A program made the position numbers and the translations under genes. A model generated the notes under the pieces. It was not told the origin of the DNA. It made no database searches and saw nothing but the letters and a program-made list of their open reading frames with translations. Shown here piece by piece: positions 4,976 through 46,138 of a stretch of 64,000 nucleotides of DNA (its first letter is position 1; each line of letters begins with the position of its first letter). This DNA comes from Hemiscyllium ocellatum (taxonomy: Eukaryota): assembly GCF_020745735.1 (NCBI RefSeq), contig NC_083409.1, forward strand, positions 20,170,341 through 20,234,340. The letters run 5' to 3'.

Positions 4976-5084
4976 GGACATTGAAAGTACTGGATTGTGG
5001 GCCCTGCTGTTGCTGTTTCTTAAAAGAACTTTGACAAAAGATAATCAGGGAGTGGTGAGAGTGAGCATCAGGTTGCATGAGGGA

Positions 5085-5975
5085 ACTGCTTGTCCTGCTT
5101 CCTGGAATACCATGAGTACAGGAAGTGTGGTCAGTGACAGCAGATGGAGCTCCGGGTTTCAGAGCTTGAGCAGCAGCTGGTGTCAGTGTGGAGCGTCCGT
5201 GAGGCTGAGAGCTCTGTAGAGAGCACGTTTCTAGATGTGGTCACTCTGCAGTTTCAGTGTATGCAGGGAGAGAGGGAATGGGGGAGCAGCAGACAGTCCA
5301 AAAGGACCAGGCAGCTAGTACAGGAATCCCCTGAATGCATCCCACTCTCCAACCAGGATTCAGTTCAGAATCCTGATGAGAATGATGGTTCATCTGGGGA
5401 GTGCAGCCAGAGCCAAGCACCCGGCACCATGGGGGGGCTCAGCTGTACAGGGGGGCACAAGGAAGGCTGGAAGAGCGATAGTGAGAGGAGATTCGAGAGT
5501 GAGGGCATCGATAGGTGTTTCTGCAGCTGCAGGTGGGAATCCAGGATGGTGTGTTATCTCCCTGGTGCCAGGGTGAAGGATGTCACTGAGCTGCTGCAGA
5601 GCACCCTGAGGGGAGAGGGGAAACAGGCAGCAGTGGTGGTCCACATCGGTCCCAGTGACAGAGGGAGAAAAGGGATGTGGTCCTGCAGTCAGAATTTAGG
5701 GAGTTCCAGAGGGAATTAGCAGCAATAGCTCAAAAGTAGGAATTTCCAAGATTACCCCCAGTGCCCCACACAACTGAGAATAGAAAGAGGAGGATAGCAC
5801 AGGTGACTGTGGAACTGAAAAGACAGTCCAGGAGGAAGGGCTTTCGATTATTTTAACTTTGGGACTGGCTTTGGGGGGAGATGGACATGTACAGACCAGA
5901 TGGGTTGCTCCTGAACAGTCCTGGGACTGAGCTCCTTTGGGGTGATTTACTCGTGCTGTTGGAGAGGGATTAAAC
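5085..5975 (+). mobile_element. CR1 ORF1 relic (coiled-coil plus esterase-like region); paralogous to 48430-49375
   Basis: ORF 5144-5719 ELRVSELEQQL...IPLSN...RMVCYLPGARVKDV...VVVHIG matches the CR1 ORF1 esterase-type layout. Confidence 0.75.
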
Positions 5976-6274
5976 TATCTTGGCCTATGGGATCCAGGAG
6001 GTAATACCAGAGAGGAACACAGAGGTGCATAGAATCCTGGGAGAGATAGATAGCACCAGAATAAGGAACAGAACTTCTTACCCAGTTTCAGAGTGAGGGA
6101 GAGAGAGTAATAAATTCAGGGTCACTGTGTAAGGATGGGACTGCACAGAGTGTTGGGAATAAGACTGGGAAGGTACAGCCACAGAGTGTTAAGTGGAAAT
6201 CTGATGTGTGTCTCTCACATAGAAACATAAGATAATAAGAACATTAGAAACAGGAGCAGGAGTGGGCTATCTGA

Positions 6275-6735
6275 CCATCGAGGATGAGGAACGTTAGTTA
6301 TGAAGGTAGACTGAAGACGTTGGGACTGTTTTCCTCAGAGAAGAGAAGGCAGAGAGGAGATTTGATCGAGAAATTCAAAATCAGGAGGGGTCTGAACAGA
6401 GTAAACTAGAAGAAAATGTTCCCACCTGAGAAAGAATTGAGAGGGAGAGGCCATGGATTGAAAATAATTGGTAAAAGAAGCAAAAGTGAGATGAGGGAAA
6501 AACATTTTCAGCCAGTGGGTGGTTCAGGTGTGGGATGCACTGCCTGAGAGTGGGGTGGAGGCAGCTTCAATTGAAACATCCCAAAGGGAATGAGACTGTT
6601 ATTTGAAAAGGAACAATGTGCAGGGTGAGAGGGAGAAGGCAGGAGAATGACACTCAGTGAATTGCTCATTCAGAGAGCCAGTACAAACAGGATGAGTTGA
6701 ATGGCCTCCTTGTGCACTGAAACGATTCTGTGATT
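6275..6735 (+). mobile_element. old CR1 3' fragment shared with 44660-45330 (inverted)
   Basis: Degenerate CR1 tail sequence. Its reverse complement aligns to 44660-45059 plus 45262-45330. Confidence 0.6.
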
Positions 6736-6790
6736 GTGTGATTGAGCAGAGTTAAAGCTGGGGGAGGTGGGAGCTCGGTGTCTCACTGTG

Positions 6791-6814
6791 CTGCTGCTGC
6801 TGCTGCTGCTGCTG
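6791..6814. repeat. (CTG)8 microsatellite in the J1 downstream intron block
   Basis: Eight perfect CTG units; paralogue is (CAG)7 at 44586-44606. Confidence 0.95.
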
Positions 6815-7183
6815 AGGTCAGTGAGATCAGGGACTGGGACAGGGAGCCAGAGCTCACATCAAACTCTGCCCGTGTCCGTCACACTGAGACTGGCAGGAGG
6901 CTACTCACTGATTTCACTCCATGCTGCAGGAATGGGACCACAGGCTGCAAATGGACAGAGCTCCTCCACACAGTGAGTAAAACTTACTGACTTATATCTT
7001 GCTGCTTAAGCAGGGCAATAGGACGACAGAAATACAGCTGGACACCCTGTTAGACACAGTGCTCCTCAATCAACCATTTCATTCACTGCAGCTCCCCATT
7101 AACACCTGCATCAATTCAGCATTTGTGATTTAGAAAGTTTCAGTATTGAAAGGGTTAATAACGGAGGATTGAGGTTTACTTAC

Positions 7184-7218
7184 TCAGTCTGAGCTTGGTT
7201 CCTTTACCGAACGTAAGC
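7184..7218 (-). CDS. IGKJ: Ig kappa-type light-chain J segment (unit 1), LTFGKGTKLRL
   Basis: Minus strand GCTTACGTTCGGTAAAGGAACCAAGCTCAGACTGA followed by donor GTAAGT; FGxG motif; identical to J2. Confidence 0.97.
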
Positions 7219-7257
7219 CACAGTGAGAGCTCCCAGTGCAGAGGCTGTACAAAAACC
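7219..7257 (+). other. 23-bp-spacer RSS of J1
   Basis: CACAGTG (7219-7225) + 23 nt + ACAAAAACC (7249-7257): perfect consensus. Confidence 0.98.
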
Positions 7258-7664
7258 TCAACTCTCTTCATCCCTCTGTCACTCTCACCCTCTCCCTATT
7301 TCCCAGTCTGTCGATCACTCTCACCCTCTTTTTGCCCCTATCAGTCTCTCCCTCATTCATGTGTCTTTCTGTCTCTGCCTCTGGGTTGTGAACTTTATTT
7401 TTTGTTGTTAAATCTTGCAGCTGTTCTTCACATGTGGCCATGGAGTGTAAGGGGGAAACCTGAGGCCTTCAGTGAGCGGTGGACACCACAGAGACTGGAG
7501 TGTGTCGTGGACAGTGACAATCCCAGCATGGGGTAATTTGTTCAGTTTCATTTAGATCTAACTGTGGGATATGACAGTTCAGGCAGTGGGACTGTGTGTC
7601 CATTATTATGCATTTTATATAACCGTGGATGTGTCAGTACAGGAGGTGATTCTGTGTGCTTTGA

Positions 7665-7692
7665 AGTTTTTGTACGGCTCTGTATCACTGTG
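7665..7692 (-). other. 12-bp-spacer RSS of V1
   Basis: Minus strand CACAGTG (7692-7686) + 12 nt + ACAAAAACT (7673-7665). Confidence 0.97.
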
Positions 7693-7989
7693 AAGGCCAG
7701 CTGTAATCCTGCAAACAGTAATAGTCAGCGACATCCTCATTCTGAACGTTGCTGATTGTCAGGGTGAAACTGGTCCCTGATCCACTGCCAGTGAATCGAT
7801 CGGAGACTCCTGTGAATCGAGTTGTTGCATCATAGATCAGGAGAGAGGGTTTCTGACCTTCTCGCTGCTGGTACCAGGAAAGCTCATTGCTAACAGATTG
7901 ACTGGCCGTACAGGTGAGTGTTGCGGTCTGGCCCAGTCCCACTGACAGCACCGGGGGAGACTGAGTCATGATGATGTCCCCACTGATAA
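7693..7989 (-). CDS. IGKV: Ig kappa-type (NS4-like) V exon, unit 1, unrearranged
   Basis: Acceptor CCCTCAG, then (V)[26 protein letters not shown]...[15 protein letters not shown]...[15 protein letters not shown]. Both Cys and the Trp are present, no stops, and it abuts a 12-RSS. Confidence 0.97.
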
Positions 7990-8175
7990 CTGAGGGGTCA
8001 GAGAGAAACGCAGTGAAATCAGAACTGTCACAGAAAGAGCCGGTCAAATGAGAAATTGTTGGAGGCACTGAGCATTCTTCTGGTTTCAGCATTTTCCCTT
8101 CAATCACAAGTCAGTGGAATTGGAGTGAAATGGAGAGCAGCTAAAGATTCAAGGTGGAAGGAGAGAGATTTGTAC

Positions 8176-8224
8176 CTGCGACACAGAATGCCAGGGGCCA
8201 GATCAGCTGGATGTGTGAAATCAT
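8176..8224 (-). CDS. IGKV: leader exon of V1 (MISHIQLIWPLAFCVA)
   Basis: ATG at 8224, 49 nt, phase-1 donor GTACAA, 186-nt intron to the V exon; identical to the unit 2 leader. Confidence 0.95.
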
Positions 8225-8284
8225 GATGTGTGCTCCTGTCCCTGTGCCTGGTTCCTGATAAACTCTCCCTTCACTGGGCTCTGC

Positions 8285-8375
8285 TTTATAAAGCTACAGC
8301 CTGTGAGAGTCTGACTGGGTGTATGTAAATAGCATCGGGCAGAGAGAGCCACGTCAGCCCCTCACACTTCCTCTT
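8285..8375 (-). promoter_or_regulatory. V1 promoter: TATA, octamer variant, PU box
   Basis: TTTATAAA 8285-8292. On minus: ATTTACAT (7/8 to the ATTTGCAT octamer) 8323-8330, TGACGTGG 8349-8356, AAGAGGAAGTG 8365-8375. Confidence 0.75.
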
Positions 8376-8409
8376 CTCTCTCTCTATCTCACTCTCTTTG
8401 TCTCAGAGT

Positions 8410-9360
8410 GATTGATGTGAACAGCACTGAATGAGGCCATTTGGCCCATTGTGTCTGTGCTGGTAAACAAAGATGTGATGACACTAATCCCATCCTCCAG
8501 CTCTTGACCCATGATCCTGGAGGCAACAGCAACACAAGGGAATATCTAAACACTGCTCCAATGTCATGAGAGTTTGTGACTCAACCAGCCTTTCAGGCAG
8601 TGAGTTCCAGACTCCCACCACCCTCTGGGTGAAAACATTTCTCCTCAATTCTTCTCTCACTCTGCAACTCAACTGGGCCTGGATTCACTCAAGTTTATAA
8701 GGATGAGACAGAATCTGATTGAAACATATAAAATTCTAACAGGCCCGGGCAGGGAGGAGGTTCCCCTGGTTGGGGAGTCTGGAACCAGGGGACACAGTCT
8801 CAGGGGGATACGGGGTAGAACATTTAGGACTGAGATGAGGAAACATTTCTTCACTCAGAGGATGGTCAACCTGATGAATTCTCTACCACAAACGGCTGTG
8901 GGGGACAAGGAATTGAATATATTCAAGAAAAAAAGAGAGATAGTTGTTTTGCATTTTAACAGCATGAAGGAAATGGGGAGAAAGCAGAAACACAGCATTG
9001 AGAGAGAGGATCAGCCATGATCGTACTGAATGACACACAAGATTCAAAGGGCTGAATGGCCTACTCCTGCTCCAAGTTTCTATGAGAACATGTCTGTGTT
9101 ACCTTCAATCTCTGTCCCTGGTTATTGAGTCCTTTACTCTTGTATAAAGTGCCTTCCTATGCAACGTATCACTGCCAACAATTATCTTATACCTCTCTAT
9201 CAGGTCCCTCTCAACCTTCAATGCTCCAAGGAAAACAGCCCCAATCTTTCCAATCTTTCCTCATAGCTGACCCTCCATCCCAGGCAGCATCCTGGGAAAT
9301 CTCCTCTGCCCCCTCTTAAGTATAATCACATCCTTCCCAGAATGTTGTGACCAGGACCTT
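8410..9360. mobile_element. cluster of short CR1 3' fragments upstream of V1, shared with about 41960-42935
   Basis: FTQRVVGVWNSLP / FFTQRMVNLMNSLP motifs in opposite orientations. The same nested set occurs inverted upstream of V2. Confidence 0.75.
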
Positions 9361-9695
9361 TCTCTCCCTCTCTCTCTTTTCCCCTTTCTGTCTCACATCT
9401 GCTACTTTGATCTCTCTACATCTATCTCTCTCTCCCACTGTTAATCTATCTCATATTCTCTCTCTCTCACTCTGTCTCATAGCCACTCTCTCCAACTCAC
9501 TCACGCTTCCTCACTCCGTCTCATAATCTTTCTCCATCTCTCACTGTCTCTGTCACTCGCTCCATCTCTCACTTCAATTGAAAACCTCCAAATGTTATCT
9601 ACCCCTCTCTATTTCTCCCTCTGTCTCTCCCTCCTTCTCCACATCCCACTCGACCTCTACTTCTCTTTCTCTGTCTCACTTCTCTCTCTTTCTCA
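9360..9695. repeat. degenerate (CT)n pyrimidine tract
   Basis: Low-complexity CT-rich run; paralogous GA-rich run at 41375-41950. Confidence 0.85.
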
Positions 9696-10034
9696 CAGTG
9701 TCCCAGGTGGAGACAGTTGAATTCAGGATAAATCTCTCTCTGCTCTGCCCCACTAATGGATGTTAACCCTTGACCCCAGAAGCATGTCTTCTCCTGGAGT
9801 AAAGGCCCATTTCCACATCGACCAGGTTTTGGTATCTCTTAGAAAGATGGACAGATTCTTGGTAAATGAAGGGCAGTTTTGTGCTGTTGGCCTATTCTCA
9901 CTGGGGATTGGTTTGGACACAAACCTCATTCCATGAAGGCCCAGCAGAGAGAGGAGATCCTCAGGCCGTCAGTGTGAGCTGGAGGGACAGGACAGGCTCT
10001 GACCCACTGACACATCCTATCCTTGCACAACATG

Positions 10035-10816
10035 GAGGAGAAAGTGAGGACTGCAGATGCTGGAGATCAGAGTTGAAAATGTGTTGCTGGAAAAGTGCAG
10101 CAGGTCAGGCAGCATCTAAAGAGCAGGAGAACCAATGTTTCGGGCATGAGCCCTTCTTCAGGAATGAGGAAACTGTGTCCAGCAGGCTAAGATAAAAGGT
10201 AGGGAGGAGGGACTTGGGGGAGGGGCTTTGGAAATGCGATAGGTGGAAGGAGGTCAAGGTGAGGGTGATAGGCCGGAGTGGGGGTGGGGGCGGAGAGGTC
10301 TGGAAGAAGATTGCAGGTTAGGAAGGCGGTGCTGAGTTCGAGGGATTTAACTGAGACAAGTGGGGGGAGGGGAAATGAGGAAACTGGAGAAATCTAGATT
10401 CATCCCTTGTGGTTGGAGGGTTCCTAGGCGGAAGATGAGGCGCTCTTCCTCCAGCCATCGTGTTGCTATGGTCTGGCGATGGAGGAGTCCAAGGACCTGC
10501 ATGTCCTTGGCAGATTGGGAGGGGGAGTTGAAGTGTCGAGCCACGGGGTGGTTGGGTTGGTTGGTCAACCATCCCATGGCTCAACAGACCATAGCAACAC
10601 GACGCCTCATCTTCCGCCTAGGAACCCTCCAACCACAAGGGATGAACCCAGATTTATCCAGTTTCCTAATTTCCCCTCCCACCACCTTGTCTCAGTCAAA
10701 TCCCTCAAACTCAGCACCGCCTTCCTAATCTGCAATCTTCTTCCTGACCTTTCTGTCCTCACCCCACTCCGGCCTATCACCCTCACCATGACCTCCTTCC
10801 ACCTATCGCATTTCCA
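10035..10816 (-). mobile_element. Penelope-like element 3' end with an inverted partial copy (hairpin)
   Basis: Minus ORF 10347-10577 (NHPVARHFNSPSQ..RWLEEERLIFRLGTLQPQGMN) is a GIY-YIG C-terminus. 10566-10816 repeats part of it on plus. Degenerate hammerhead core at about 10130-10165 on minus. Confidence 0.85.
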
Positions 10817-10821
10817 GTGCC

Positions 10822-11085
10822 AACAGTAAACATGGACGTCAGTTCACGAGAGTGCTCCATGGAGAAACATGGGCCTCCTTCCCACTGAAGCTCCCAATAG
10901 AGACCAGTAAACATGGACATCATTCCTGCTTGAGCCTCCAATAAAGACCAGGAAATGTTGGCCTCCTTCCTAATGGACTCTCCAAAGGAGACCAGTAAAC
11001 ATGGACCACCTTCTGACTGGATACTCCAAGAATACCAGTAAATGTGGGCCTCCTATTCACTTGTCGTTCTAATAGAGACAAGTGG
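10822..11085. repeat. degenerate ~44-bp tandem array (resumes at 12328-12395 after a CR1 insertion)
   Basis: Units with core ACCAGTAAACATGG start at 10822, about 10865 (truncated), 10903, 10947, 10991, 11034 and 11078 (spacings 44,44,43,44). Confidence 0.8.
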
Positions 11086-12325
11086 ATAGTTGAGTTTTTG
11101 AAGAAATAGATAAAAATAGATCAGTACACATTGTCGACATGGACTTTAGCAAGGCCTTAGACAAGATTTCCTATGGTAAACTGCTTAGTAAGATTATATC
11201 ACAGAGGATCTAGGGAGAGCTAACCAATTGGATATAAAATGGGCCTGAAGGTAGGAGGCAGAGGTTGGTGAGAGAGGGTTGTTCTTCAGACTGGAGGCCA
11301 CTGACCAGCCGTCTGCCACAAGAATCGATCCTGGATCCACTGTTGTTCATCATTTACATGAACAATTTGGATGAGAAAATAGCAGGAATGGTCAGTAAGT
11401 TTGTGGCTGACATTAAAATTGTTGGCATCATGGACAGGGAAGATGGTTATCTAAGAGTGCAATGTCATCTTCATCAACTGGGCCAGTGGGTCAACAAATC
11501 CAGATGGAGTTTAATTTCGATAAATGCAAGGAGTTGCATTTTGGTAAGACCAACCAGGGCAGGAATTACACAACTAATGGTAGAGCCATGGGGAGTGTTG
11601 TTGAACAGAGACACTGAGGGGTACAGGTGCATAGTTCCTTGGAAGTGGTGTCACAGGGAGACATGGTGGTGAAGAAGGTATTTGGCTCGTGGACCTTCAA
11701 TGGTCAAAGCAGGAAGTACAGGAGCTGGGACATCATGTTACAGCTGTACAAGGCATTGGTAAGGCCACATTTGGACACTGTGTACATTCCTGCTCACCCT
11801 GCTGTAGGAAGGAAGTTACTGCACTGGTTTGGATAAAAGAAAGATTAACAGGGATGTTACCAAGGTTGGTGAGTTTGAATTACAAGGTGAGGATGGATAA
11901 GCCGAGAGATTTTTCCTGTGAATGCAGGAGATTGAGGGGTGACCTTAGAGGGGTTTATAGAATCATTAGGGCCATAGATAAGGAGAATAGCCAAAGTTTT
12001 TTTTTCCCCAGAGTAGGAGAGTCCAGTACGAGAAGGAATATGTTTAAGTTGAGAGGGGAAAGAATTAGAAGGGACCTGAGAGGCAACCTTTTCACACAGA
12101 GGTTGGTGTGTATGTGTAATAAGCTGCCACAGGAAGTGGTGGAGGGGAGTACAATTACTAAATTTCAAGGACATTTTTACAGGAACATGGATAGGAAGGA
12201 TTTAGAGGGGATTGGGCCAAATGCATGCGGATGGGACTAGTTCAGTTTTGGAAACTTGGTCGGCATGGATGAGTTGAGCAGAAGGGCCTGCTGCCACGCT
12301 GTAAACCTCTATGGCTCTATGATGA
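11086..12325 (+). mobile_element. CR1-type LINE, 5'-truncated
   Basis: ORFs 11265-11672 (PQESILDPLLFIIYMNNLD..KFVADIKI) and 11689-12240; tail CTCTATGGCTCTATG. Confidence 0.85.
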
Positions 12326-13254
12326 TGTAAACATGGGGCACCTTCCCATAGGACCAACAAACAGTAAACATGGGCCTCCTTCCTGAGCTGCAAACCCCAC
12401 ATCCTGTCCATCACATAGGTCCCTTATTTCAATCTGCACAACATTGTTTGTCTCTGCACTACCTCAGCCTCTTGACCACCAAAACCCCAATTCCTGCTCA
12501 TCCCACCTCCTGACTCTATGATTTCAATGTCTTCTCCCAGCTTCCTGAAGCCACATTCCATCAACCCCAACTTGTCTGATATGGAGTGGTCCCTTCCCTG
12601 TCTCACAACTACAGTTGTTCCAGAATCTGACCTCACTGCCAGCCAATTGCCTCCATGGCCTCCCTCCTCCCTCACTCTGTGTCCTGCTGTAGACTCACAT
12701 TCCCTCCCTCCCCCTTCCATCTTCTGTCTCTGGTCTCCTGCCCATTACTGCTTCCTCCATCCCACCATTGACAGCAGAGCCTTCAGACCCCGAGAGTATC
12801 CTCTCTGCCTTCTTCATCCCTCCCTCTCTCGTTGTTTGTGCTATTGAATATACTGTTTAGTTCCATCACTTTTGGTTCGCTGTTCCCTTGCCATTGATTT
12901 GCTGATTTATTCTAGTAAATCTAGTCTGGTGTGTTCTCTGAGTTGGTTCAAGAGTGTTTTGCTTGAGAAAACACTTCCGTGAACTGGTTTGTCTGTTTCT
13001 CCCAGTCTTTGTGTAAAGGTGAGACTAAGTGTGGAAAAGCTGTCATTTCATGGAGCAATCCAGTCAGTCCCACCCCCTCCCCTACTCGACCCCCAGAGCC
13101 TTGTAGGTTTATTTCCATCAAGAGCCCATCCAATCTGCCATTGCAATCACTGAGTGTCTTCACCTGCCTCACCTGAATGGGCACTAATTTCCAAGTCATT
13201 ACGAATTGCTGCTAAAAGAAGTTCTTCCTGACATCCCATATCTCTTGCCCAACA

Positions 13255-13785
13255 AAATGCAAGGTAATCTCAATGTGAAGATGGGATTTTGTCTGCACAC
13301 GGACTGTGCAGTTGTCACCCTTACTGATACTGTCATGGACAGATACACCAGCAGCAGGCAGGTTGGTGAGGGTGATAGTGAGTATGTTTTTCCCTCTTGT
13401 TGGTTCCCTCACCACCTGCCCCAGGTCCAGTCGAGCAGCTGAATCAGGTGGAACCTGACCAGCTTGCTCAGTAGTGATGCTTCTGAGCAGCTCTTGATGG
13501 TGGACTTTGAAGTCCCTTACTCAGGGTATATCCTGCATCATTCCCTCCTTCAGTGCTCCCTCCAAGTGTTGTTCAACATGGAGGAGGACTGACTGCTCAG
13601 TTGAGGTTGGAGGGGAGGGCGGTGCTATGTGGTAATCAGCAGGAGGTTTCCTTCCCCATGTTTGACCTGTTGTCATGAGGCTTCATGGATTCCATAGTTA
13701 ATGGTGAGGACTCCCAGGGCAACTCCCTTCCGACTGTACACACCACTGTGTTGCCTCCCCTGCTTGGTCTATCCTGCCAGTTAAA
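13255..13785 (-). mobile_element. APE-endonuclease region of a non-CR1 LINE (clade unresolved)
   Basis: ORF 13212-13415 REPTRGKNIL..LTNLP..SVHDSISKGD. Same family as 39050-40340, same orientation, so an independent insertion. Confidence 0.6.
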
Positions 13786-13980
13786 AACTGAATGAGGGAA
13801 CAATTCCATTCAGGTTTTACAGCTTGGAGACAGAGCTGCTGCTGGATTCTGTTTCTGATCTCCGAGTGCAGGCGTATGTGTTTGTGAGAGAGTGACTGTC
13901 CTCTTTCCCATCACTGTGCTGTTTCTGAAAAGAAAAATCCCAGAACCAGCCTCCTGTGCTGTCAGGTTCTCGGGAGTGCA

Positions 13981-14220
13981 GACAGTTCACAGTTTTCTCC
14001 CGTCTCAGTAACAAACATCCAGCTGCTCCGAGCTCTTTATTTCACTTCCTCTTTTGGTGAAGTTTCAACCTTGCGATCTGACAGTCTTTGCAGTTATTTT
14101 TTACACTGGGGCTTTCTGCTGTGGTCAGAATCTCTAATAATAAGTGTCCAATCAGTGACAATCACAGCAACTAAGAGCAGTCAGGACTGAGGAGCCAGGC
14201 TCACTGGGAAACACATTGGG
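13981..14220. promoter_or_regulatory. conserved non-coding element, candidate B-cell enhancer (copy 1)
   Basis: 231/240 identical, no indels, to the reverse complement of 37753-37992. Contains an EICE (GGAAGTGAAA on minus, 14040-14049), CAGCTG 14020, TGTGGT 14120 and CCAAT 14148. Confidence 0.6.
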
Positions 14221-14879
14221 AAGATCAAAGCCATTCCTCTTCAGCTCCCAGTACAAACTCTATCCCTCTCCCTGAGCACTGCCTGCTGCTCAACCAGACT
14301 CTTTACAAACTTGGCCTCATCTTTGGGGCTGATCTGAGCACCATATCCTCCATCTCACAAAGATCAGCAACTGAAAATCTCTGTCATGTGCATGGGACTC
14401 CAAACATGACCATACCAATGTTGTGCTTGCACACATCACAGCCACTGCCCTCCGTAACCTTCAGCTCATCCCAATTTCTGCTGCCCCATATCTAAACTCG
14501 TATCAAATCCCATTCCTCCAACCCCCTGCGCCCTGTGCCTACATTGGCTCCTGGTCCAGCAACACCTTGATTTTCAAATTCTCATCCTTGTTCTCAAGTC
14601 CTTCCCTGTCCTCCACTCTCCCTATCTCTGTAACCTCCTCCAAACTGCCTCACTCAGTGTGATCAACAATCTTGGATATATGGCTGTCTATTCCTTCATC
14701 CAAGTCATTTAGAAATATCGTGAAATGCTGAGGTTCTAGCCCAATTCCCTGGCGACACCACTATCCACATTTTGCTCATTGGAGAGCACACACATTATCC
14801 CTCCTCTCTGTCTCCTACCTCCAAACTAATTTCTGACCAAAGATAAATACTTTTCTCTAACTGGCGAGAATGGGAGAAA

Positions 14880-17225: not shown

Positions 17226-19277
17226 GAACAAAGAGCAATGAAAATTACAGCATAAGAACTGGCCCTTTGGCCCTACTAGCCTGCACTGGTCTATATTCTC
17301 CACCTAAACCTGTCATCAATTTTCCAAGGGTCTATCTCCCTTTGCTCCCTGCCCATCCATGTATCTATCTAGATATATCTTAAATGATGCTATTGTGCCT
17401 GCCTCTACCACCTCCACTGGCAACGTGTTCCAGGACCAATCACTTTCTGTGTGAAGAACTTTCCATACATATCTCCTTTAAATGTTTCCACTCTCACTTT
17501 CAACTCATGACCCAGAGTAATTGAGTCCCCCACTCTGGGAAAAAGCTTCTTGCTATCCACCCTGTCTACACCTCTCATGATTTTGTAGACCCCAATCAAC
17601 GTTCAACTTTCTAATGAGAATAATCTTAATCTACTAAGCATCTCTTCATAGCTAGTGCCCTCCATACCAGGTAATCCTGGTGAACCTCCTCTGCACCCTC
17701 TCCAAAGCATCCACATCTTTCTGGTAATGTGGCAACCAGAACTGTACGCAGTATTCCAAATGTGGCCAAGCCAAAGTCCGATATAATTCTAATATGACCT
17801 TCCAACTCTTGTACTGAATACCATGTCTGGTGAAGGAAGCTATGCCATATACCTTCTTGACCACTCTATCGACCTGTGTTGTCACCTCCAGGGTACAATG
17901 GACCTGAACACCCAGGTCTCTCTGGGCATCAATTTTCCCAGGGTGTTCCATTCACCGTACAGTTTACTCCAGATTTGGATCTTCCAAAATTCATCAGATT
18001 GCATTTGCCCGGATTGAACTCCATCCGTCCGTTTTCTGCCCAATTCTCCAATCTATCTATATTCTGCTACACTCTCTGACAGTCCCTTTCACTATCTGCT
18101 ACTCCACCAATCTTAGTGTCATTTGGAAACTTGTGACTCAGACCACCTATACCTTCCTCCAGATCATTTATGTATATCAAAAACAAGAGTGGTGCCAGCA
18201 CAGATTCCTGTTCTCCATTCTGAGAAACTCCTTCCACTACTACTGTCTGTCTTCTGTTGCCCAGCCTGTTCCCTATCCATCTAGTGAGTACACTCTGGAC
18301 CCCATATGACTTTAATTTCTTTATCAGGCTACCATGGGGAACTTTATCAAACACATTCCTGAAATCCATGTGTATGACATTCACGGCCCTTCCCTCATCA
18401 ATCAACTTCATCACTTCTTCAAAAGATTCTATAAAGTTGGTAAGACATGATATTCCCTGCACAACTTCATGCTCCCGATAACTGATAATTCAATTTTCGT
18501 CCAAATGTAAATAGATCTTATCCCTCAGTATCTTCTCCAGCAGCTTTCCTACCACTACATCAGGCTCACTAGTTGGTAGTTACCTGGATTATCCTGGCTA
18601 CCCTTCTTAAACATTAGCAATTCTCCAGTCCTCTGGGACCTCATCCATGTTCAAGGTTGCTACAAAGATATCGATTAAGGCCCCAGCTATTTCCTCTCTT
18701 GCTTCCCTCAGTAAGCTGGGATCGATCCCATCCCGACCTGGGGACTTGTGCACCTTGATGCCTTTTAAAATACCCAACACTTCCTCCCTCCTTAAACCGA
18801 CTTGACCCTGAGTAATCAAACATCTATCCCCAACTTCAACATCTGTCATTTCCCCCTCCTTGGTGAATACCGACGTAAAGCACTCATTAAGAATTTCATC
18901 CATTTTCTCTGACTCCACACATAACATTCCTCCTTTGCCCTTGAGTGGGCCAACCCTTTCTCTAGTCACCCACTTGCTCCTTATATATGAATAAAAGGAT
19001 TTGGGATTTTCCTTAATCCTGTTTGTGAATGATATTTTGTGACCCTTTTTAGCCCTTTTAGTTCCTCACTTCAGATTGGTCCTACTTTCACAATATTCTT
19101 CCAAAGCTTTGTCTGTTTTCAGCTACTTAGACCTTATGTATGCATCCTTTTTCCTCTTAGCTAGTCTCACAATTTCATCTGTCATCCAGCGTTTCCTAAT
19201 CCTGCCATTTCAATCCCTTATTTTCACAGGAACATGTCTGTCCTGACTCTAGTCAACCTCTCTTTAAAAGCCTCCCA

Positions 19278-19880: not shown

Positions 19881-22366
19881 AAAAACAAGCTCCTTCCAAA
19901 TTTTGCTGCAGTTGGCCTTCCCCCAGTTTAGCCGTCTACCTTTCAGACCACTCTTGTCTTTGTCCATGAGCATTCTAAAACTTATGGAATTATGGTCACT
20001 GTTACCAAAATAATCCCCTACTGAAATTTCAACCACCTGGCCGGGCTCATTCCCCAAAACCAGGTCCAGTATGGCCCCTTCCTGAGTTAGACTATTTCCA
20101 TATTACTCTGTAAAATCCTCCAGGATGCTCCTTACAAATTCTGCTCCATCTTAACTTCTAACATTAAGTGAATCCCAGTCAATGTTGGGAAAATTAAACT
20201 CTTCCATCACCACCGAGATGTAACTCCTACATCTTTCCATAATCTGTTTACATATTTGCACCTCTAGCCCAGGTTCACTGTTAGGAGACTTGTATATTAG
20301 CACCAACATCGTTACTGCACCCTTCCTGTTTCTGAGCTCTGCCCATATTGCCCCACTGCTCGAGTCCTCCATAGTGCCCTCTTTCACACACCTGTGGTAT
20401 CCACTCTGACCAGTAATGCAACTCCTCCATCCCTTTACCTGCCTCTCGAACCTATCTGATACATCTGTATCCTGGGATATTTAGTTGCCAATCTTGCCCT
20501 TCCCTCAACCACGTCTCCGTAATAGTAATAACATCATACTCCCAGATACTAATCCAAGCCCTAAATTCCTCTGCCTTACCTACTACACTTCTCACATTAA
20601 AACAAATGTGCCTAAGACCATTTGTTCCTTAGCGTTCATCATCTGCTCCCTACCTACTCTTAACCTTAGTCACGCTGACTTCAATATCTAGTTCCTGACA
20701 GGCTTTAGTTACTCCCTTCTTATTGCCCACTAACCTCCTCATTTGGTTCCCATCCCTCTGCTACACTATTTTGAACCCTCCCCAAGAGCGTGATCAAACA
20801 CATCCCTCAGGACACTGGTTTCAGTCCTGCCCAGGTGTAGACCACTCGATTTGTAATTGTCCCACCTCCCCAGGAACCAGTCCCAATGTCCCAAAAATCT
20901 GAACCCCTCCCTCCTGCACCATCTCTCAAGCCACGCATTCATCCTGCCTATACTTTCATTTCGACTCTGACTAGCACATGGCACTGGGAGCAATCCTGAG
21001 ATTACTACCTCTGAGATCCTACCATAAGACCATAAGACATAGGAGTAGAAGTAAGGCCATTTGGCCCATCGAGTCCACTCCGCCATTCAATCATGGCTGA
21101 TTGGCATTTCAACTCCACTTACCCGCATTCTCCCCGTAGCCCTTAATTCCTCGAGACATCAAGAATCTATCAATCTCTGCCTTGAAGACAATTAGCGTTC
21201 CGGCCTCCACTGCACTCTGCGGCAATGAATTCCACAGGCCCACCACTCTCTGGCTGAAGAAATGTCTCCGCATTTCTGTTCTGAATTGACCCCCTCTAAT
21301 TTTAAGGCTGTGTCCACGGGTCCTAGTCTCCTCGCCTAACGGAAACAATTTCCTAGTGTCCACCCTTTCCAAGCCATGTATTATCTTGTATGTCTCTATT
21401 AAGTCTCCCCTTAATCTTCTAAACTCCAATGAATACAATCCCAGTATCCTCAGCCGTTCCTCATATGTTAGACCTACCATTCCAGGGATCATCCGTGTGA
21501 ATCTCTGCTGGACACGTTCCAGTGCCAGTATGTCCTTCCTGAGGTGTGGAGACAAAAACTGGACACAGTCCTCCAAATGGGCCTAACCAGTAGCACAACG
21601 GTGCTTTTATATTCCAACCCTCTTGAGATAAGTGACAACATTGCATTCGCTTTCTTAATCACGGACTCAACCTGCATATTTACCTTTAGAGAATCCTCGA
21701 CTAGCACTCCCAGATCCCTTTGTACTTTGGCTTTACAAATTTTCTCACCGTTTAGAAAGTAGTCTATGCTTTTATTTTTTTTGCCAAAGTGCAAGACCTC
21801 GCATTTGCTCACATTGAATTCCATCAGCCATTTCCTGGACCACTCTCCCAAACTGTCTAGATCCTTCTGTAGTCTTCCCACTTCCTCAGTACTACCTGCC
21901 TGTCCACCTAACTTCGTATCACCTGTAAACTTCGCTAGAATGCCCCCAGTCCCTTCATCCAGATCATTAATATATAATGCGAACAGCTGTGGCCCCAACA
22001 CTGAACCCTGCGGGACACTGCTCATCATCGGCTGCCATTCTGAAAAAGAACCTTTTATCCCAACTCTCTGCCTTCTGTCAGACAGCCAATCCTCAATCCA
22101 TCCCAGTAGCTCACCTCGAACACCATGGGTCCTCACCTTGCTCAGCAGCCTCCCATGTGGCACCTTAGCAAAGGCCTTTTGGAAGTCTAGATAGACCACA
22201 TCCACTGGGTTTCCCTGGTCTAACCTACTTGTCACCTCTTCAAAGAATTCCAACAGGTTTGTCAGGCATGACTTCCCCTTACTGAACCCATGTTGACTTG
22301 TTCTAATCAGACTCTGCTCTTCTTAGAATTTAGAAACCTCATCCTTAATGATGGATTCTAGAATTT

Positions 22367-23221
22367 ATATTTCCTTCCCCTCCCCTATCAGTGTTCCGCA
22401 AAGACCACTCCCTTCGTGACTCCCTCGTCAGGTCCACACCCCCCCACCAACCCAACCTCCACTCCCGGCACCTTCCCCTGCAACCACAGGAAATGTAAAA
22501 CTTGCGCCAACACCTCCTCTCTTACTTCTCTCCAAGGCCCCAAGGGATCCTTTCATATCCGCCACAAATTCACCTGCACCTCCACACACATCATCTATTG
22601 CATCCGCTGCACCCGATGTGGCCTCCTCTATATTGGGGAGACGGGCCGCCTACTTGCGGAACGCTTCAGGGAACACCTCTGGGATGCCCGGACCAACCAA
22701 CCCAACCACCCCGTGGCTCAACACTTTAACTCTCCCTCCCACTCCACGAAGGACATGCAGGTCCTTGGACTCCTCCATCGGCAGAACATAACAACACAAC
22801 GGTTGGAGGAAGAGCGCCTCATCTTCTGCCTGGGAACCCTCCAACTACAAGGGATGAACTCAGATTTCTCCAGTTTCCTCATTTCCCCTACCCCCACCCT
22901 GTCTCAGTCAATTCCCTCGAACTCAGCACCGCCCTCCTAACCTGCAATCTTCTTCCTGACCTCTCCGCCCCCACCCCACTCCAGCCTATCACCCTCACCT
23001 TGACCTCCTTCCACCTATCACATCTCCATCGCCCCTCCCCCAAGTCCCTCCTCCCTACTTTTTATTTTAGCCTGCCTGGCACACTCTCCTCATTCCTGAT
23101 GAAGGGCTCTGGCCCGAAACGTCGAATTTCCTGTTCTTTGGATGCTGCCTGACCTGCTGTGCTTTAACCAGCAACACACTTTCAGCTCTGATCTCCAGCA
23201 TCTGCAGACCTCACTTTTTAC
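22367..23221 (+). mobile_element. Penelope-like element 3' part with GIY-YIG endonuclease reading frame
   Basis: ORF 22416-22940: CNHRKCKTC Cys linker, IIYCIRC..LYIGETGR..RFREH, HFN. Flanked by TCTAGAATTT (22357-22366) and TCTAAAATTT (23222-23231). Confidence 0.9.
23092..23127 (+). ncRNA. minimal type I hammerhead ribozyme motif
   Basis: ATTC-CTGATGA-A-GGGC-TCTG-GCCC-GAAA-C-GTC-GAAT. Full catalytic core, 4-bp stems I and II, palindromic ACGT in place of helix III, predicted cleavage after C23123. Confidence 0.8.
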
Positions 23222-37083: not shown

Positions 37084-37752
37084 GAATTGGATTGAATTTG
37101 AGAAATGCATTTACCTTGGGTCAGGAATGGGTCTGTCTAGGAGACAGAGAGGAAGGATAACGTGCGTGTGTTCCAATGAGCCAGATGTGAGTAGTGGTAT
37201 TCCCAGGGATCTGTGCTGGGACCTCAGCTTTTCACGATATTTCTCAATGACTTGGATGAAGAAACAGAGAGCCATATGTCCAAGATTATTGATCACACTG
37301 AGTGAGGCAGCTTGGAGGAGGTCACAGAGATAGGGAGGGTGGAAGAGCAGGGAGCAGATTGAGAACAAAAATGAGAATTTGAAAATCGAGGTGTTGCTGG
37401 ACCAGGAGCTTATGTCAGTCAGTGAGGATTGTGGTGGCTATGGTGGGGTGGGGAGGCATGGGCAGGGGTATGGGGTGGACTTGGTGTGAGTTTGAACACA
37501 GACAGCAGAGTTTGGGATGAGCTGATGTTTACGGAAGTCAGTGGCTGTGATGTGGGCCTGGATAACATTGGAAAGTTCACAAAAACATGGTTGAGATTTT
37601 CAGTGGCTGATAATTGTGATGTGGAGGATTTGGGCCTCAAATCAGCCCCAAAGATGAGGCCAAAGTTGTAAAGAGTCTGGTTGAGCAGCAGACAGTGCTC
37701 AGGGAGAGGGATGGAGTTTGTACCGGGAGCTGAAGAGGATGACTTTGATCTT

Positions 37753-37992
37753 CCCAATGTGTTTCCCAGTGAGTCTGGCTCCTCAGTCCTGACTGCTCTT
37801 AGCTGCTGTGATTGTCACTGATTGGACACTTATTATTAGAGATTCTGACCACAGCAGAAAGCCCCAGTGTAAAAAATAACTGCAAAGGCTGTCAGATCGC
37901 AAGGTTGAAACTTCACCAAAAAAGGAAGTGAAAGAAGGAGCTCGGAGCAGCTGGGCGTTTGTTACTGAGATGGGAGAAAACTGTGAACTGTC
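37753..37992. promoter_or_regulatory. conserved non-coding element, candidate B-cell enhancer (copy 2)
   Basis: Inverted paralogue of 13981-14220. AAAAGGAAGTGAAA (EICE core 37924-37933), CAGCTG 37948, ACCACA 37848, ATTGG 37821. Confidence 0.6.
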
Positions 37993-38540
37993 TGTACTCC
38001 CTGGAATTTGACAGCACAGGAGGAGGCCATTCAGCCCATCAGGCCTTTGAATGACCCAGTTAATCCCACTGCTCCCTTCTCTCTCCCCGTAACCCAGCAA
38101 ATCTTTCCTTTACAGTTCAATCTCCAATTCCCTCTTATAGACCTCATGTCCACAAAGGGAGACTGCCCTGAACCTGGGCTACAAATTGGCATCTCATTCA
38201 TTCATTGGGAGACAAACTGCCTGGGCTGGGAAATGGAGCTCAGGATCTGGAACATTCCCTCTCCCCTCCTGAGGAACACTTCACCGGCTGGGTCAACATT
38301 ATTTACCCTGTCTCTAGTTGCCCTGGAGTAGGTGGTGGGAAGCTGCCATCTTGAATTGTTATCGTCCACAAGCTGTAAGTTGACCCACATTGCCAGCATT
38401 TTAACCCAGCAAGGCTGAGGGATCAGCGACATGTTTCCAAGTCCGGATGCTAAGCTTTTTCGAGGGGAACTTGCAGCTCACAGTGTTCCCATGTATCTGC
38501 TGCTCTTGTTCTAAATGGAAGTGAACGTGGGTTTGGAGGG

Positions 38541-42983: not shown

Positions 42984-43082
42984 AAGAGGAAGTGTGAGGG
43001 GCTGAAGTGGCTCTCTCTGCCTGATGCCATTTACATACTGAGGAACACCCAGTCAGACTCTCACAGGCTGCAGCTTTATAAA
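42984..43082 (+). promoter_or_regulatory. V2 promoter: PU box, octamer variant, TATA
   Basis: AAGAGGAAGTG 42984-42994; ATTTACAT 43029-43036; TATAAA 43077-43082, about 60 nt before the ATG. Confidence 0.75.
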
Positions 43083-43142
43083 GCAGAGCCCAGTGAAGGG
43101 AGAGTTTATCAGGAACCAGGCACAGGGACAGGAGCACACATC

Positions 43143-43191
43143 ATGATTTCACACATCCAGCTGATCTGGCCCCTGGCATTCTGTGTCGCAG
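43143..43191 (+). CDS. IGKV: leader exon of V2 (MISHIQLIWPLAFCVA)
   Basis: ATG 43143, 49 nt, donor GTACAA, 186-nt intron ending CCCTCAG at 43377. Confidence 0.95.
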
Positions 43192-43377
43192 GTACAAATC
43201 TCTCTCCTTCCACCTTGAATCTTTAGCTGCTCTCCATTTCACTCCAATTCCACTGACTTGTGATTGAAGGGAAAATGCTGAAACTAGAGGAATGCTCAGT
43301 GTCTCCAACAATCTCTCATTTGACCGGCTCTTTGTGTGACAGTTCTGATTTCACTGTGTTTCTCTCTGACCCCTCAG

Positions 43378-43676
43378 GTATCAGTGGGGACATCATCATG
43401 ACCCAGTCTCCCCCGGTGCCGTCAGTGGGACTGGGCCAGACCGCAACCATCACCTGTACGGCCAGTGAATCTGTTAGCAAGTGGGTTAGCTGGTACCAGC
43501 AGCGAGAAGGTCAGAAACCCTCTCTCCTGATCTATGAAGCAACAAAACGATTCTCAGGAGTCTCCGAGCGATTCACCGGCAGTGGATCAGAGACCAGTTT
43601 CACCCTGACAATCAGCAACGTTCAGAATGAAGATGTTGCTGACTATTACTGTCAGCAGCATAGGAGCTACCCTCGA
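43378..43676 (+). CDS. IGKV: Ig kappa-type (NS4-like) V exon, unit 2, unrearranged
   Basis: (G)[57 protein letters not shown]; open frame, abuts a 12-RSS. Confidence 0.97.
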
Positions 43677-44176: not shown

Positions 44177-44211
44177 GCTTACGTTCGGTAAAGGAACCAA
44201 GCTCAGACTGA
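44177..44211 (+). CDS. IGKJ: Ig kappa-type J segment (unit 2), LTFGKGTKLRL
   Basis: FGKG motif; donor GTAAGT at 44212; phase matches the C exon. Confidence 0.97.
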
Positions 44212-44585
44212 GTAAGTAAACCTCCATCCTCTGTTACTAACCCTGTCAATACTGAAATACACTTTCTAAAATACAGTTGCTGATTTGTTGAAGGTGTTAG
44301 TGGGGAGCTGCAGTGAATGAAATGGTTGATTGAGGAGCACTGTGTCTAACAGGATGTCCAGCTGTATTTCTTTACTTTCATGCCCTCTTTAAAAAATGCA
44401 AGATATAAGTCAGTCAGTTTTACTCACTGGGTGGAGGAGCTCTGTCCATTTGCAGCCTGTGGTCCCATTCCTGCAGCATGGAGTGAAATCAGTGAGCAGC
44501 CTCCTGCCAGTCTCAGTGTGACGGACATGGGGCAGAGTTTGATGTGGCTCTGGTTCCCTGTCCCAGCCTCTGATCTCACTGACCT

Positions 44586-44606
44586 CAGCAGCAGCAGCAG
44601 CAGCAG
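44586..44606. repeat. (CAG)7 microsatellite
   Basis: Seven perfect units. Confidence 0.95.
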
Positions 44607-45059
44607 CACAGTGAGACACCGAGCTCCCACCTCCCCCAGCTTTAACTCTGCTCAATCACACAATCACAGAATTGTTACAGCGCACAAGGAGACCACTCTG
44701 TCCATCCTGTATGGACTAGCTCTCCGAATGAGCAATTGACTGAGTGTCATTCTCCTGCCTTCTCCCTGTCACCCTGCACATTGTTCCTTTTCAAATAACA
44801 GTCGCATTCCCTTCGGAATATTTCAATTGAAGCTGCCTCCACCACACTCTCAGGCAGTGCATTCCACACCTTAACCACTCACTGGCCGAAAAAGTTTTCC
44901 CTCATCACACTTTTCTTACTTTTTCAATTACTTTCAATCTGTGGCCTCTCGGTCTAAATCCTTTCACAAGTGGAATCATTTTTTCCCTATTTACTCTGTT
45001 CCAGGCCCCTCCTGATTTTGAATTTCTGGAACTATTCTCCTCACTGCCTTCTCCAAAGA

Positions 45060-45261
45060 CTTGGAAGTGCCGGTGTTGGACTGGGGTGGACAAAGTTAAA
45101 AATCACACAACACCAGGTTATAGTCCAACAGGGGGTTTATTTGGAAGCACTGGCTTTCGGAGCGCCCCTCCTTCATCAAATGGTTGTCAGTGGCGCTCCG
45201 AAAGCTAGTGCTTCCACATTAACCTGTTGGACTATAACCTGATGTTGTGTGATCTGTAACT
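45060..45261. mobile_element. Penelope-derived ~200-bp hairpin (family B) with 11-bp TSD
   Basis: Inverted arms; TTCTCCAAAGA at 45049-45059 and 45262-45272; absent from the paralogous site near 6340; degenerate hammerhead core on minus. Confidence 0.75.
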
Positions 45262-46138
45262 TTCTCCAAAGAAGACAGTCCCAAATTCTCCAATCTATCT
45301 TCATAACTGATATTCCTCATCCCTGGAATGATCTTTGTGCATATGTTTGCCAGCTCTAAAAAAAATTCACACCCTTCCTGCATTATTCACATTATTTATG
45401 TCCCTCACGATTTTATAAACCTCTATAAGGTCACTCCTCAGCCTCCGGCACTTCAGGGTAAAAGATCTCAGCTTTTCCAGCCTCTAATTGTCACGGAGTC
45501 AGACAGCGTGGAAACAGATCTTTCAGTCTAACTTCTCCATGCTAATCAGATATCCAAAACTGACCTCATCCCATTTGCCAGCATTTAGCCCACATCCCTC
45601 TAAACCCTTCCTATCCATGTACCCATCCAAACATCTTTTAAATGCTATAATTGTATCTGTCTCCAGCACATTCTCTGACAGCTCGATCCATACACGTACC
45701 ACCCTCTGTGTGACAAGTTACCCCTCAGGTCCCTTTTGCATCTTTTGCCTCTCATCTTAAACCTATACCCTCTAGTTTTGGATTCCCTTTCCCAAGGCAA
45801 AGACCTGGGATATACACCCTGTCCACCCTTCAGTCTCCGATCCTGCAGGAAAAATAACCCGTTTATTGAGCCTCTTCCGACAGCTTAAACCCTCCAGTTC
45901 CAGGCAACATCCATGTAAATCTTTTCTGCAGAATTTTAAGTTTAACAGTATCCTTCCTATCACAGGATGATCAGAATTGTTCACGTTATTCCCAAAGTAG
46001 CCTCACCAATTTCCTGTACAGCTGCAAATGATGTCCCAACGCTGATACTTAGTGCAGTGACCAATAAAGGCAAGTGTACCCAACACCTTCTTCATCTCCC
46101 TATCTCCCTGTGACTCCACTGTCAAGGAATAATGCCCA

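What the first reader, a model, noticed from the sequence alone, without database searches (positions are those of the whole stretch)
13981..14220. Upstream element 5-6 kb from each V promoter with a canonical PU.1/IRF composite site: candidate shark kappa enhancer
The two copies are 231/240 identical, with an 84-nt perfect stretch (14086-14169), although the DNA between them and the promoters has been replaced by different TEs in each arm. Both keep GGAAGTGAAA with an A-rich 5' flank (AAAAGAGGAAGTGAAA and AAAAAAGGAAGTGAAA). This matches the EICE (GGAAnnGAAA) known from mammalian Ig lambda-B and kappa 3' enhancers. They also keep an E-box, a RUNX site and CCAATCA. Both copies lie between the divergent promoters, so each could act on either unit. 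I know of no characterised shark light-chain enhancer in this position.
Basis: partly seen in the sequence, partly recalled or inferred. Interest (0 to 1): 0.7.

Follow-up and report, generated by a model that had tools for sequence, protein, structure and literature searches.

The report
Conserved enhancer-like block upstream of shark kappa genes
A roughly 355-base non-coding block about 5-6 kb upstream of each of two shark antibody kappa light-chain genes changes about four times more slowly than its flanks, recurs at the same place in a bamboo-shark contig, and carries the binding-site set of bird and mammal light-chain enhancers, so it is a credible but untested candidate for the genes' B-cell switch.

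Summary
13981-14220 and 37753-37992 (inverted) are 231/240 identical, with an 84-nt perfect run.

The conserved unit is larger than reported: about 355 nt, at 13950-14304 and 37670-38023. It lies 5.7 and 5.1 kb upstream of two head-to-head kappa V genes.

A third copy lies 6.4 kb upstream of a kappa V gene in a Chiloscyllium punctatum contig, in the same orientation. The three copies are equidistant at about 95% identity. Their flanks are 80-84% identical, so the core changes about 4 times more slowly (P 1e-5 to 1e-11).

All three copies keep these sites:
- GGAAGTGAAA, the mouse lambda-B PU.1/IRF core
- a MEF2 site
- CAGCTG
- a RUNX site
- two CCAAT boxes

There is no NF-kB site.

Nothing points to another kind of element. 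There was no Rfam match, no stable RNA fold and no protein match for its reading frames. No other copy or repeat-family match turned up in the 95 kb I hold. Contig depth in public runs resembles cluster-linked DNA, not high-copy repeats.

Contigs from three further organism labels laid on the window carry the block; six labels in all share its words.

The most likely reading is a cluster-linked cis-regulatory module of the enhancer type. Activity, chromatin state and transcription are untested.

The scan had already noted the same module at eight or more other kappa clusters of this genome.

The parts
13950..14304 (-). Conserved core, copy A, read towards V1. High A/B identity continues to about 14340.
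   Evidence: 94.9% identical to copy B and 94.6% to C. punctatum L001:3268-3620. Flanks are 80-84%.
37670..38023 (+). Conserved core, copy B, read towards V2.
   Evidence: Inverted partner of copy A. 94.9% identical to L001 in the global alignment and 95.4% in the BLAST match.
14040..14049 (-). ETS-IRF composite element GGAAGTGAAA, copy A, with flank AAAAGA.
   Evidence: Same core as mouse lambda-B AATAAAAGGAAGTGAAAC (PMC4872103).
37924..37933 (+). ETS-IRF composite element GGAAGTGAAA, copy B, with flank AAAAAA.
14134..14143 (.). MEF2 consensus site (TTATTATTAG / CTAATAATAA), copy A. Copy B: 37830-37839.
   Evidence: Matches YTAWWWWTAR on both strands and is invariant in three copies.
14020..14025 (.). 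E-box CAGCTG, 14 nt beyond the EICE, copy A. Copy B: 37948-37953.
   Evidence: Invariant in three copies.
14120..14125 (+). RUNX core TGTGGT, copy A. Copy B: 37848-37853, read as ACCACA.
   Evidence: Invariant in three copies.
14148..14154 (+). CCAAT box (CCAATCA), copy A. A second CCAAT lies on the other strand at 14214-14220. Copy B: 37819-37825 and 37753-37759.
14305..14862 (.). Duplicated flank made of old retroelement pieces, used as the neutral control. Copy B: 37097-37669.
   Evidence: 79.5-80.8% identical among the three copies. 14611-14751 (-) translates to a reverse-transcriptase fragment.
7694..8224 (-). Kappa V1: leader ATG 8224, V exon 7978-7694, 12-spacer RSS. J1 at 7211-7191.
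43143..43673 (+). Kappa V2: leader ATG 43143, V exon 43389-43673, 12-spacer RSS. J2 at 44184-44204, C exon at 61999-62307.
   Evidence: The C exon is 96-99% identical to C. punctatum kappa C.

Best explanation
The block is a cis-regulatory module that belongs to each kappa V-J-C cluster and is kept by purifying selection. Most likely it is a B-lineage enhancer.

Inferred mechanism: a PU.1/Spi-B-type ETS factor recruits an IRF4/8-type partner on GGAAGTGAAA. MEF2, E-protein (CAGCTG), RUNX and NF-Y-type factors bind the neighbouring invariant sites. The assembled complex then activates the V promoter 5-6 kb away, and with it transcription and probably accessibility of that cluster.

Shown here: the block exists, it is linked to kappa V genes at a fixed side and orientation in three loci, it changes about 4 times more slowly than its flanks, and it holds these sites.

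Inferred: that the factors bind, that the block enhances, and which promoter it serves.
For: Structure
- Two inverted copies lie upstream of two head-to-head kappa V genes.
- A third copy is at L001:3268-3620, 6.4 kb upstream of a kappa V gene in C. punctatum contig BEZZ01005289.1. Order and orientation are the same.

Rate
- The core is 94.9, 94.6 and 94.9% identical in the three pairs.
- The retroelement flank is 79.5-80.8% and the V-side flank 84.2%. Fisher P ranges from 1.7e-5 to 1.3e-11.
- The equal distances argue against recent homogenisation within one genome.
- The block is kept nearly as well as the V promoter and leader.

Other organisms
- A 785-nt contig of organism E matches only 13976-14373, at 94.5%. 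A contig of organism D matches 14075-14389 at 93%.
- Six organism labels in 12 studies share its 31-mers.

Motifs
- EICE, MEF2, CAGCTG, RUNX and two CCAAT boxes are invariant in all three copies.
- EICE, MEF2 and an E-box occur together in a random 355 nt with probability of about 5e-5.
- Within the 95 kb held, only the three cores have an EICE with MEF2, an E-box and RUNX all within 355 nt.
- Human, mouse and chicken Ig lambda enhancers share E-box, NF-kB, MEF2 and PU.1-IRF4 sites (PMC3972084).
- Copy B shares the 14-nt AAAAGGAAGTGAAA with the mouse lambda-B site (PMC4872103).

Not something else
- No Rfam match.
- RNA fold z-scores are +1.2 and +0.4.
- No Pfam match for either reading frame tested. 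A word-based search of the core frame gave no hit; the whole-library search of the frame over the core's outer end (14175-14492) gave only chance matches.
- No similarity to any other DNA or ORF in the window or the loci.
Against: - No activity, chromatin or binding data exist.
- No run on record as RNA holds the block. The small 'RNA?' runs have depth profiles that track the DNA runs.
- The motifs were picked after the fact, and at 95% identity their retention in three copies is expected anyway.
- The NF-kB site of amniote lambda enhancers is absent.
- The position, upstream of V, differs from every characterised light-chain enhancer.
- The leader intron is just as well kept. Some homogenising process may therefore act in these clusters.
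- In one run (X12) the summed depth over 14100-14299 is 3-7 times that of cluster-linked DNA. Extra copies elsewhere are not excluded.
- The outer 90 nt of the core looks retroelement-derived. That rests on my recollection only; searches did not confirm it.
Confidence: 0.55

Rival explanations
1. It is a cis-acting element of another kind linked to the cluster. Candidates are a promoter of sterile upstream transcripts, a boundary or accessibility element, or chiefly a targeting element for somatic hypermutation (DIVAC-like) rather than a transcriptional enhancer.
For: The conservation and linkage are the same as for the enhancer reading. Two CCAAT boxes and an A/T-rich site could serve a promoter. 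In chicken cells, E-box, MEF2 and PU.1-IRF4 sites of Ig enhancers target hypermutation with little effect on transcription (PMC3972084). Sterile transcripts of unrearranged shark IgL are reported (PMC5192425).
Against: No run on record as RNA holds the block. No CTCF core is present. The AATAAA in copy A is private to that copy. The review states that promoters appear to be associated only with V segments (PMC5192425).
Confidence: 0.2
2. It has no function. The island of identity comes from gene conversion or another homogenising process among clusters, or from chance variation in rate.
For: The V leader intron is 92-97% invariant in four sequences, which selection on coding sequence cannot explain. 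Only three copies were compared.
Against: The three copies are equidistant in core and flanks, including a copy from another assembly. Recent conversion within one genome would make A and B closer to each other. The limits of the island coincide in three copies and in a contig of organism E. The contrast with both flanks has P of 1e-5 or lower.
Confidence: 0.12
3. It is a piece of a transposable element or a dispersed repeat that merely travelled with the cluster duplications.
For: It abuts retroelement fragments that were duplicated with it. Summed contig depth shows it is multi-copy. The outer part of the core reads like the continuation of a LINE tail, but this is recollection and unverified.
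Against: There is no other copy in the window or the three loci, at DNA or translated level. Depth is about 1000 times lower than the SINE at 9900-10299, and in three of four runs it is similar to cluster-linked DNA at 9700-9899. A neutral repeat would not be 4 times better kept than its flanks. An old repeat origin would not exclude present function.
Confidence: 0.06
4. It encodes a structured RNA or a small exon.
For: An 80-96 codon frame is open through the core in copies A and B.
Against: No Rfam match. Folding is no better than shuffles on either strand. There is no Pfam match and no protein relative. No conserved splice donor sits at the boundary.
Confidence: 0.03

Closest known systems
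Mouse and human Ig lambda enhancers (E-lambda 2-4 / 3-1, with the lambda-B PU.1/IRF4 site) and the chicken Ig lambda enhancer
   Same: They share a MEF2 site, a PU.1-IRF composite site and an E-box downstream of it, in that order (PMC3972084). The GGAAGTGAAA core and its A-tract flank are identical to lambda-B (PMC4872103).
   Different: The shark block has no NF-kB site. It lies upstream of V instead of downstream of C, it serves a kappa-type gene, and there is one per mini-locus. Homology outside the motifs was not tested. No activity is shown.
Mouse Ig kappa 3' enhancer (PU.1 / NF-EM5 site plus E-box)
   Same: It has an ETS-IRF composite next to an E-box in a kappa locus (PMC3972084, supplementary legend).
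   Different: The mouse core is GGAACTGAAA and lies 3' of C-kappa. An earlier scan note claims equal spacing between the sites. I could not check that here.
DIVAC elements (Ig enhancers that target somatic hypermutation)
   Same: The site set is the same: E-box, MEF2 and PU.1-IRF4 (PMC3972084).
   Different: That function is defined by an assay in DT40 cells. Nothing of the kind has been done for sharks.
Teleost Ig enhancers (catfish IgH E-mu3')
   Same: This is the nearest characterised fish Ig enhancer. It also uses an E-protein site (PMC1800861 abstract).
   Different: It belongs to a heavy-chain locus, its core has octamer motifs and it has no EICE. The shark block has no octamer.

Membership tests
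EICE-type Ig light-chain enhancer (amniote lambda and kappa 3' enhancers) | ETS-IRF composite element GGAAnnGAAA | tested here: met
   GGAAGTGAAA is present in all three copies. Consensus from PMC4334403.
EICE-type Ig light-chain enhancer (amniote lambda and kappa 3' enhancers) | MEF2 site and E-box accompanying the composite site | tested here: met
   TTATTATTAG lies 92 nt before GGAAGTGAAA and CAGCTG lies 14 nt after it. Both are invariant.
EICE-type Ig light-chain enhancer (amniote lambda and kappa 3' enhancers) | NF-kB site | tested here: not met
   No match to GGGRNWYYCC in any copy.
EICE-type Ig light-chain enhancer (amniote lambda and kappa 3' enhancers) | Position in the J-C intron or downstream of C | tested here: not met
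   The block lies 5.1-6.4 kb upstream of the V leader in three loci.
EICE-type Ig light-chain enhancer (amniote lambda and kappa 3' enhancers) | B-cell-specific, orientation-independent activation of a promoter; factor binding | not testable with these tools
   Needs reporter, binding or chromatin assays.
EICE-type Ig light-chain enhancer (amniote lambda and kappa 3' enhancers) | Sequence homology to amniote enhancers beyond the motifs | not tested
Conserved non-coding element under constraint | Slower change than flanking non-coding DNA in independent comparisons, with syntenic position | tested here: met
   About 5% versus 16-20% divergence in three pairs. Same side, order and orientation relative to V.
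Transposable element / dispersed repeat | Many copies unlinked to the gene family; similarity to TE proteins or termini | tested here: inconclusive
   No other copy in 95 kb. Depth resembles cluster-linked DNA in three of four runs and is higher in the fourth. No genome-wide census was possible.
Structured RNA family | Match to a covariance model, or a fold more stable than shuffles | tested here: not met
   Rfam gave no match at E up to 1. Fold z-scores are +1.22 and +0.42.

The most novel reading that the evidence does not exclude
The MEF2 / PU.1-IRF / E-box grammar of bird and mammal light-chain enhancers was already in place in the common ancestor of jawed vertebrates. In sharks it sits as one private copy upstream of V in every kappa mini-locus. 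There it both switches on that cluster independently of the others and directs somatic hypermutation to it. This would be a physical basis for how a genome with dozens of clusters activates them one at a time.
Probability: 0.25. Interest if true: 0.85.

Novelty: new variant of a known kind. Interest (0 to 1): 0.62.

Why it matters
I found no characterised immunoglobulin enhancer in cartilaginous fish. Two reviews of fish immunoglobulins do not use the word at all (PMC4279169, PMC5192425), and searches for shark light-chain enhancers returned nothing relevant.

How sharks activate only a few of their many separate V-J-C clusters per B cell is an open question. The heavy-chain exclusion study proposed infrequent formation of a promoter-enhancer complex as the limiting step (PMC2435157).

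This finding supplies a defined 355-nt candidate element, one per cluster, with mutable sites. It gives that model a concrete object to test. It also allows a direct comparison of enhancer grammar between sharks and amniotes.

Tried and rejected
- Fishing for more copies through the open frame across the core: the protein search found nothing. That search only sees proteins of 44-140 aa, so it says little.
- Testing whether 14175-14492 is a LINE open-reading-frame tail: the whole-library profile search gave two repetitive chance hits. Pfam found nothing and the Atlas gave no usable hit. There are no other copies of the recalled tail motifs in the DNA held. The LINE-tail reading of 14213-14600 therefore rests on recollection only. 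14611-14751 (-) and 14863+ are confirmed reverse-transcriptase fragments.
- Fetching the upstream regions of kappa genes from Scyliorhinus torazame, Cetorhinus maximus, Heterodontus francisci and Hemiscyllium ocellatum: gene models exist, but no DNA was served. One further look-up failed for lack of a slot.
- Two more C. punctatum contigs (L002, L003) end 2.2-2.7 kb upstream of V, so they cannot show the block.
- An LTR-like reading (CCAAT, TATA-like, AATAAA) was rejected. The AATAAA is private to copy A, and the 'TATA-like' site is a MEF2 consensus.
- A host gene between the two blocks that they might serve: only RT fragments and a GIY-YIG (Penelope-type) ORF were found there.
- Depth as copy number: the runs are contigs, and depth is a per-contig mean. 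Only rough comparisons between bins were used.
- Checking the claimed equal EICE to E-box spacing in the mouse kappa 3' enhancer: the paper holding the probe sequence is not held in full.
- A look-up of earlier findings by sequence was blank.

Full report
**What the window holds.** The window contains two Ig kappa light-chain clusters arranged head to head.
- V1 is on the minus strand: leader ATG 8224, V exon 7978-7694, heptamer/12-spacer/nonamer, J1 at 7211-7191.
- V2 is on the plus strand: leader ATG 43143, V exon 43389-43673, J2 at 44184-44204.
- A kappa C exon follows V2 at 61999-62307.
- The C exon is 96-99% identical to Chiloscyllium punctatum kappa C, 95-98% to Hemiscyllium ocellatum and 92% to nurse shark. 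The animal is therefore a hemiscylliid or close to one.
- The two clusters form an old inverted duplication, 4989-10034 against 49487-40863, at 78-89% identity.

**The observation.**
- 13981-14220 matches 37753-37992 in reverse complement at 231/240, without gaps. The perfect run of 84 nt is 14086-14169.
- GGAAGTGAAA occurs twice in 64 kb, both times in this element. The expectation is 0.33.
- The E-box, the RUNX core and CCAATCA are present in both copies.
- The homologous stretch is longer than reported: 13950-14860 against 38023-37097.
- It has two parts. The core of about 355-390 nt (13950-14304, fading by 14340) is 95-96% identical. The rest is about 80% identical and is built of old retroelement fragments.
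- One of those fragments, 14611-14751 (-), translates to a reverse-transcriptase piece.

**A third copy in another assembly.** A search with the V2 exon found C. punctatum V-gene models. One of them lies on a 16-kb contig, BEZZ01005289.1 (L001).
- Its V gene is at 10001-10561. The core recurs at L001:3268-3615, 6.4 kb upstream, in the same order and orientation relative to V as in both arms of the window.
- Core identity is 94.9% (A-B), 94.6% (A-L001) and 94.9% (B-L001).
- The retroelement flank gives 79.5, 80.8 and 80.8% for the same pairs. The V-side flank, which B and L001 still share, gives 84.2%.
- The core therefore changes about four times more slowly than both flanks. Fisher P ranges from 1.7e-5 to 1.3e-11.
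- All three copies are equidistant in core and in flanks. A single slower rate in the core fits this better than recent homogenisation within one genome.
- The V-side limit of the core falls at the same base in all three copies.
- I cannot say whether L001 comes from the same species as the window. No C. punctatum protein is identical to V1 or V2; the best matches are 94% and 82%.

**Public runs.**
- Words of the block are held by runs of six coded organism labels in 12 studies.
- I laid four runs on 8700-14699. I used arm A because arm B holds a run of N, which I left alone.
- A 785-nt contig of organism E fits only 13976-14373, at 94.5%. A contig of organism D fits 14075-14389 at 93%. The same runs match other cluster-linked DNA (9664-10034) at 85-93%.
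- At 14170 nearly all contigs of all four runs read G, as copy B does. The A in copy A is therefore a private change.
- All four runs are contigs, so depth is only a rough guide. Summed depth over the core is about a thousand times lower than over the SINE at 9900-10299.
- In three of the four runs the core's depth is within about two-fold of cluster-linked DNA at 9700-9899. In run X12 it is 3-7 times higher, which I cannot explain with certainty.
- The counts of distinct contig variants over the core (4-22) resemble those over 9700-9970 (7-30). They are below those over repeats (50-75).
- This fits one copy per kappa cluster. About 60 kappa genes are estimated in nurse shark (PMC5192425). It does not prove the point.
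- No run on record as RNA holds the block. The small runs guessed to be RNA have depth profiles that follow the DNA runs, so there is no evidence of transcription.

**What it is not.**
- Rfam gives nothing at E up to 1.
- Neither strand folds better than shuffles; the z-scores are +1.22 and +0.42.
- The open frame through the core has no Pfam match. It has no relative among short proteins either.
- No other DNA or translated ORF in the window or the three loci resembles the core.
- The 22 kb between the two copies holds reverse-transcriptase fragments and a GIY-YIG ORF, but no host gene that the block might serve.

**The sites.** Read towards V, the core holds these sites in order:
- a CCAAT box
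- two TGGGAA on the other strand
- a second CCAAT on the other strand
- a MEF2 consensus, TTATTATTAG
- a RUNX core, 8 nt further on
- GGAAGTGAAA with an A-rich 5' flank
- CAGCTG, 14 nt after it

All are invariant in the three copies, except one TGGGAA that L001 lacks. No NF-kB, octamer, EBF or CTCF consensus is present.

The central 130 nt has only three variable positions. The 8 bases flanking the composite site hold four variable positions, while its 11-base core holds none.

GGAAnnGAAA is the ETS-IRF composite element bound by PU.1/Spi-B with IRF partners (PMC4334403). The mouse lambda-B site is AATAAAAGGAAGTGAAAC, and A-tracts 5' of GGAA mark high-affinity PU.1 sites (PMC4872103). Copy B shares 14 consecutive bases with that site.

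Human, mouse and chicken Ig lambda enhancers share E-box, NF-kB, MEF2 and PU.1-IRF4 sites, and the mammalian ones have a further E-box downstream of PU.1. Mutating these sites abolishes their targeting of hypermutation (PMC3972084). The shark block has three of those four site types, in the same order.

In a first-order random model, a 355-nt stretch holds an EICE, a MEF2 site and an E-box together with probability of about 5e-5. The choice of motifs was made after the fact, so this figure overstates the significance. Retention of the sites in copies that are 95% identical adds little.

**Reading.** The firm result is a conserved non-coding element linked to kappa V genes; I put that at about 0.9. 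The most likely function is a B-lineage enhancer of its own cluster, working through a PU.1/IRF complex with MEF2, E-protein and RUNX partners (0.55). PU.1-family factors exist in cartilaginous fish (Anderson et al. 2001, cited in PMC5192425).

Rivals are:
- another cis function, such as a sterile promoter, accessibility control or hypermutation targeting (0.2)
- homogenisation without function (0.12)
- a repeat carried along with the duplications (0.06)
- an RNA or an exon (0.03)

The equally strong conservation of the V leader intron (92-97% invariant in four sequences) warns that some non-selective process may act in these clusters.

**Comparison with what is known.** The block works like, or at least looks like, the EICE-type light-chain enhancers of amniotes. 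It fails two of their descriptive features: position downstream of C, and the NF-kB site. Its defining feature, activity, is untestable here. I therefore file it as a new variant of a known kind, not as a member. I found no described Ig enhancer of cartilaginous fish in the library.

**Earlier notes of this scan.** The scan had already noted the same module upstream of kappa V genes at eight or more other places of this genome. I used these notes as leads only. My independent checks (third copy, rate contrast, site map) agree with them. I did not see their sequences.

Noticed in passing
window 8041-8290 (minus strand); partner about 43080-43330: The V promoter, leader exon and leader intron are 92-97% invariant across four sequences (both arms plus two C. 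punctatum contigs). That is better than the V exon itself (65-82%). Such conservation of an intron suggests constraint or homogenisation.
   Followed up: partly
window 6527-6626 and 6713-6951 (J1-C intron side): There are two further small islands of conservation downstream of J. One is 88% invariant in four sequences and the other 94.6% between the arms. They could be a second regulatory element in the J-C intron.
   Followed up: no
window 53739-59036 (minus strand): An apparently intact LINE lies in the J2-C2 intron: a coiled-coil ORF (58170-59036), an endonuclease ORF (56012-57547, Exo_endo_phos) and a reverse-transcriptase ORF (53739-56090, RVT_1).
   Followed up: partly
window 44204-61999: J2 and the C exon are about 17.8 kb apart, far more than the few kb of classical shark clusters. 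The gap is filled by repeats. No C exon for cluster 1 lies in the window.
   Followed up: no
window 22416-22937 (+): An ORF with a GIY-YIG nuclease domain, as in Penelope-like elements, lies next to reverse-transcriptase fragments at 21492-22322 and 18070-18462.
   Followed up: no
window 43020-43143 and 39362: The V2 promoter has ATTTACAT, an octamer with one change, and TATAAA upstream of the leader ATG. The only canonical octamer in the window (ATTTGCAT, 39362) lies between core B and V2.
   Followed up: no
L001:3034-3267 and L001:3616-3898: In the C. punctatum copy, two insertions of about 235 and 284 nt sit exactly at the two ends of the conserved core. The insertions spared the core itself.
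   Followed up: partly
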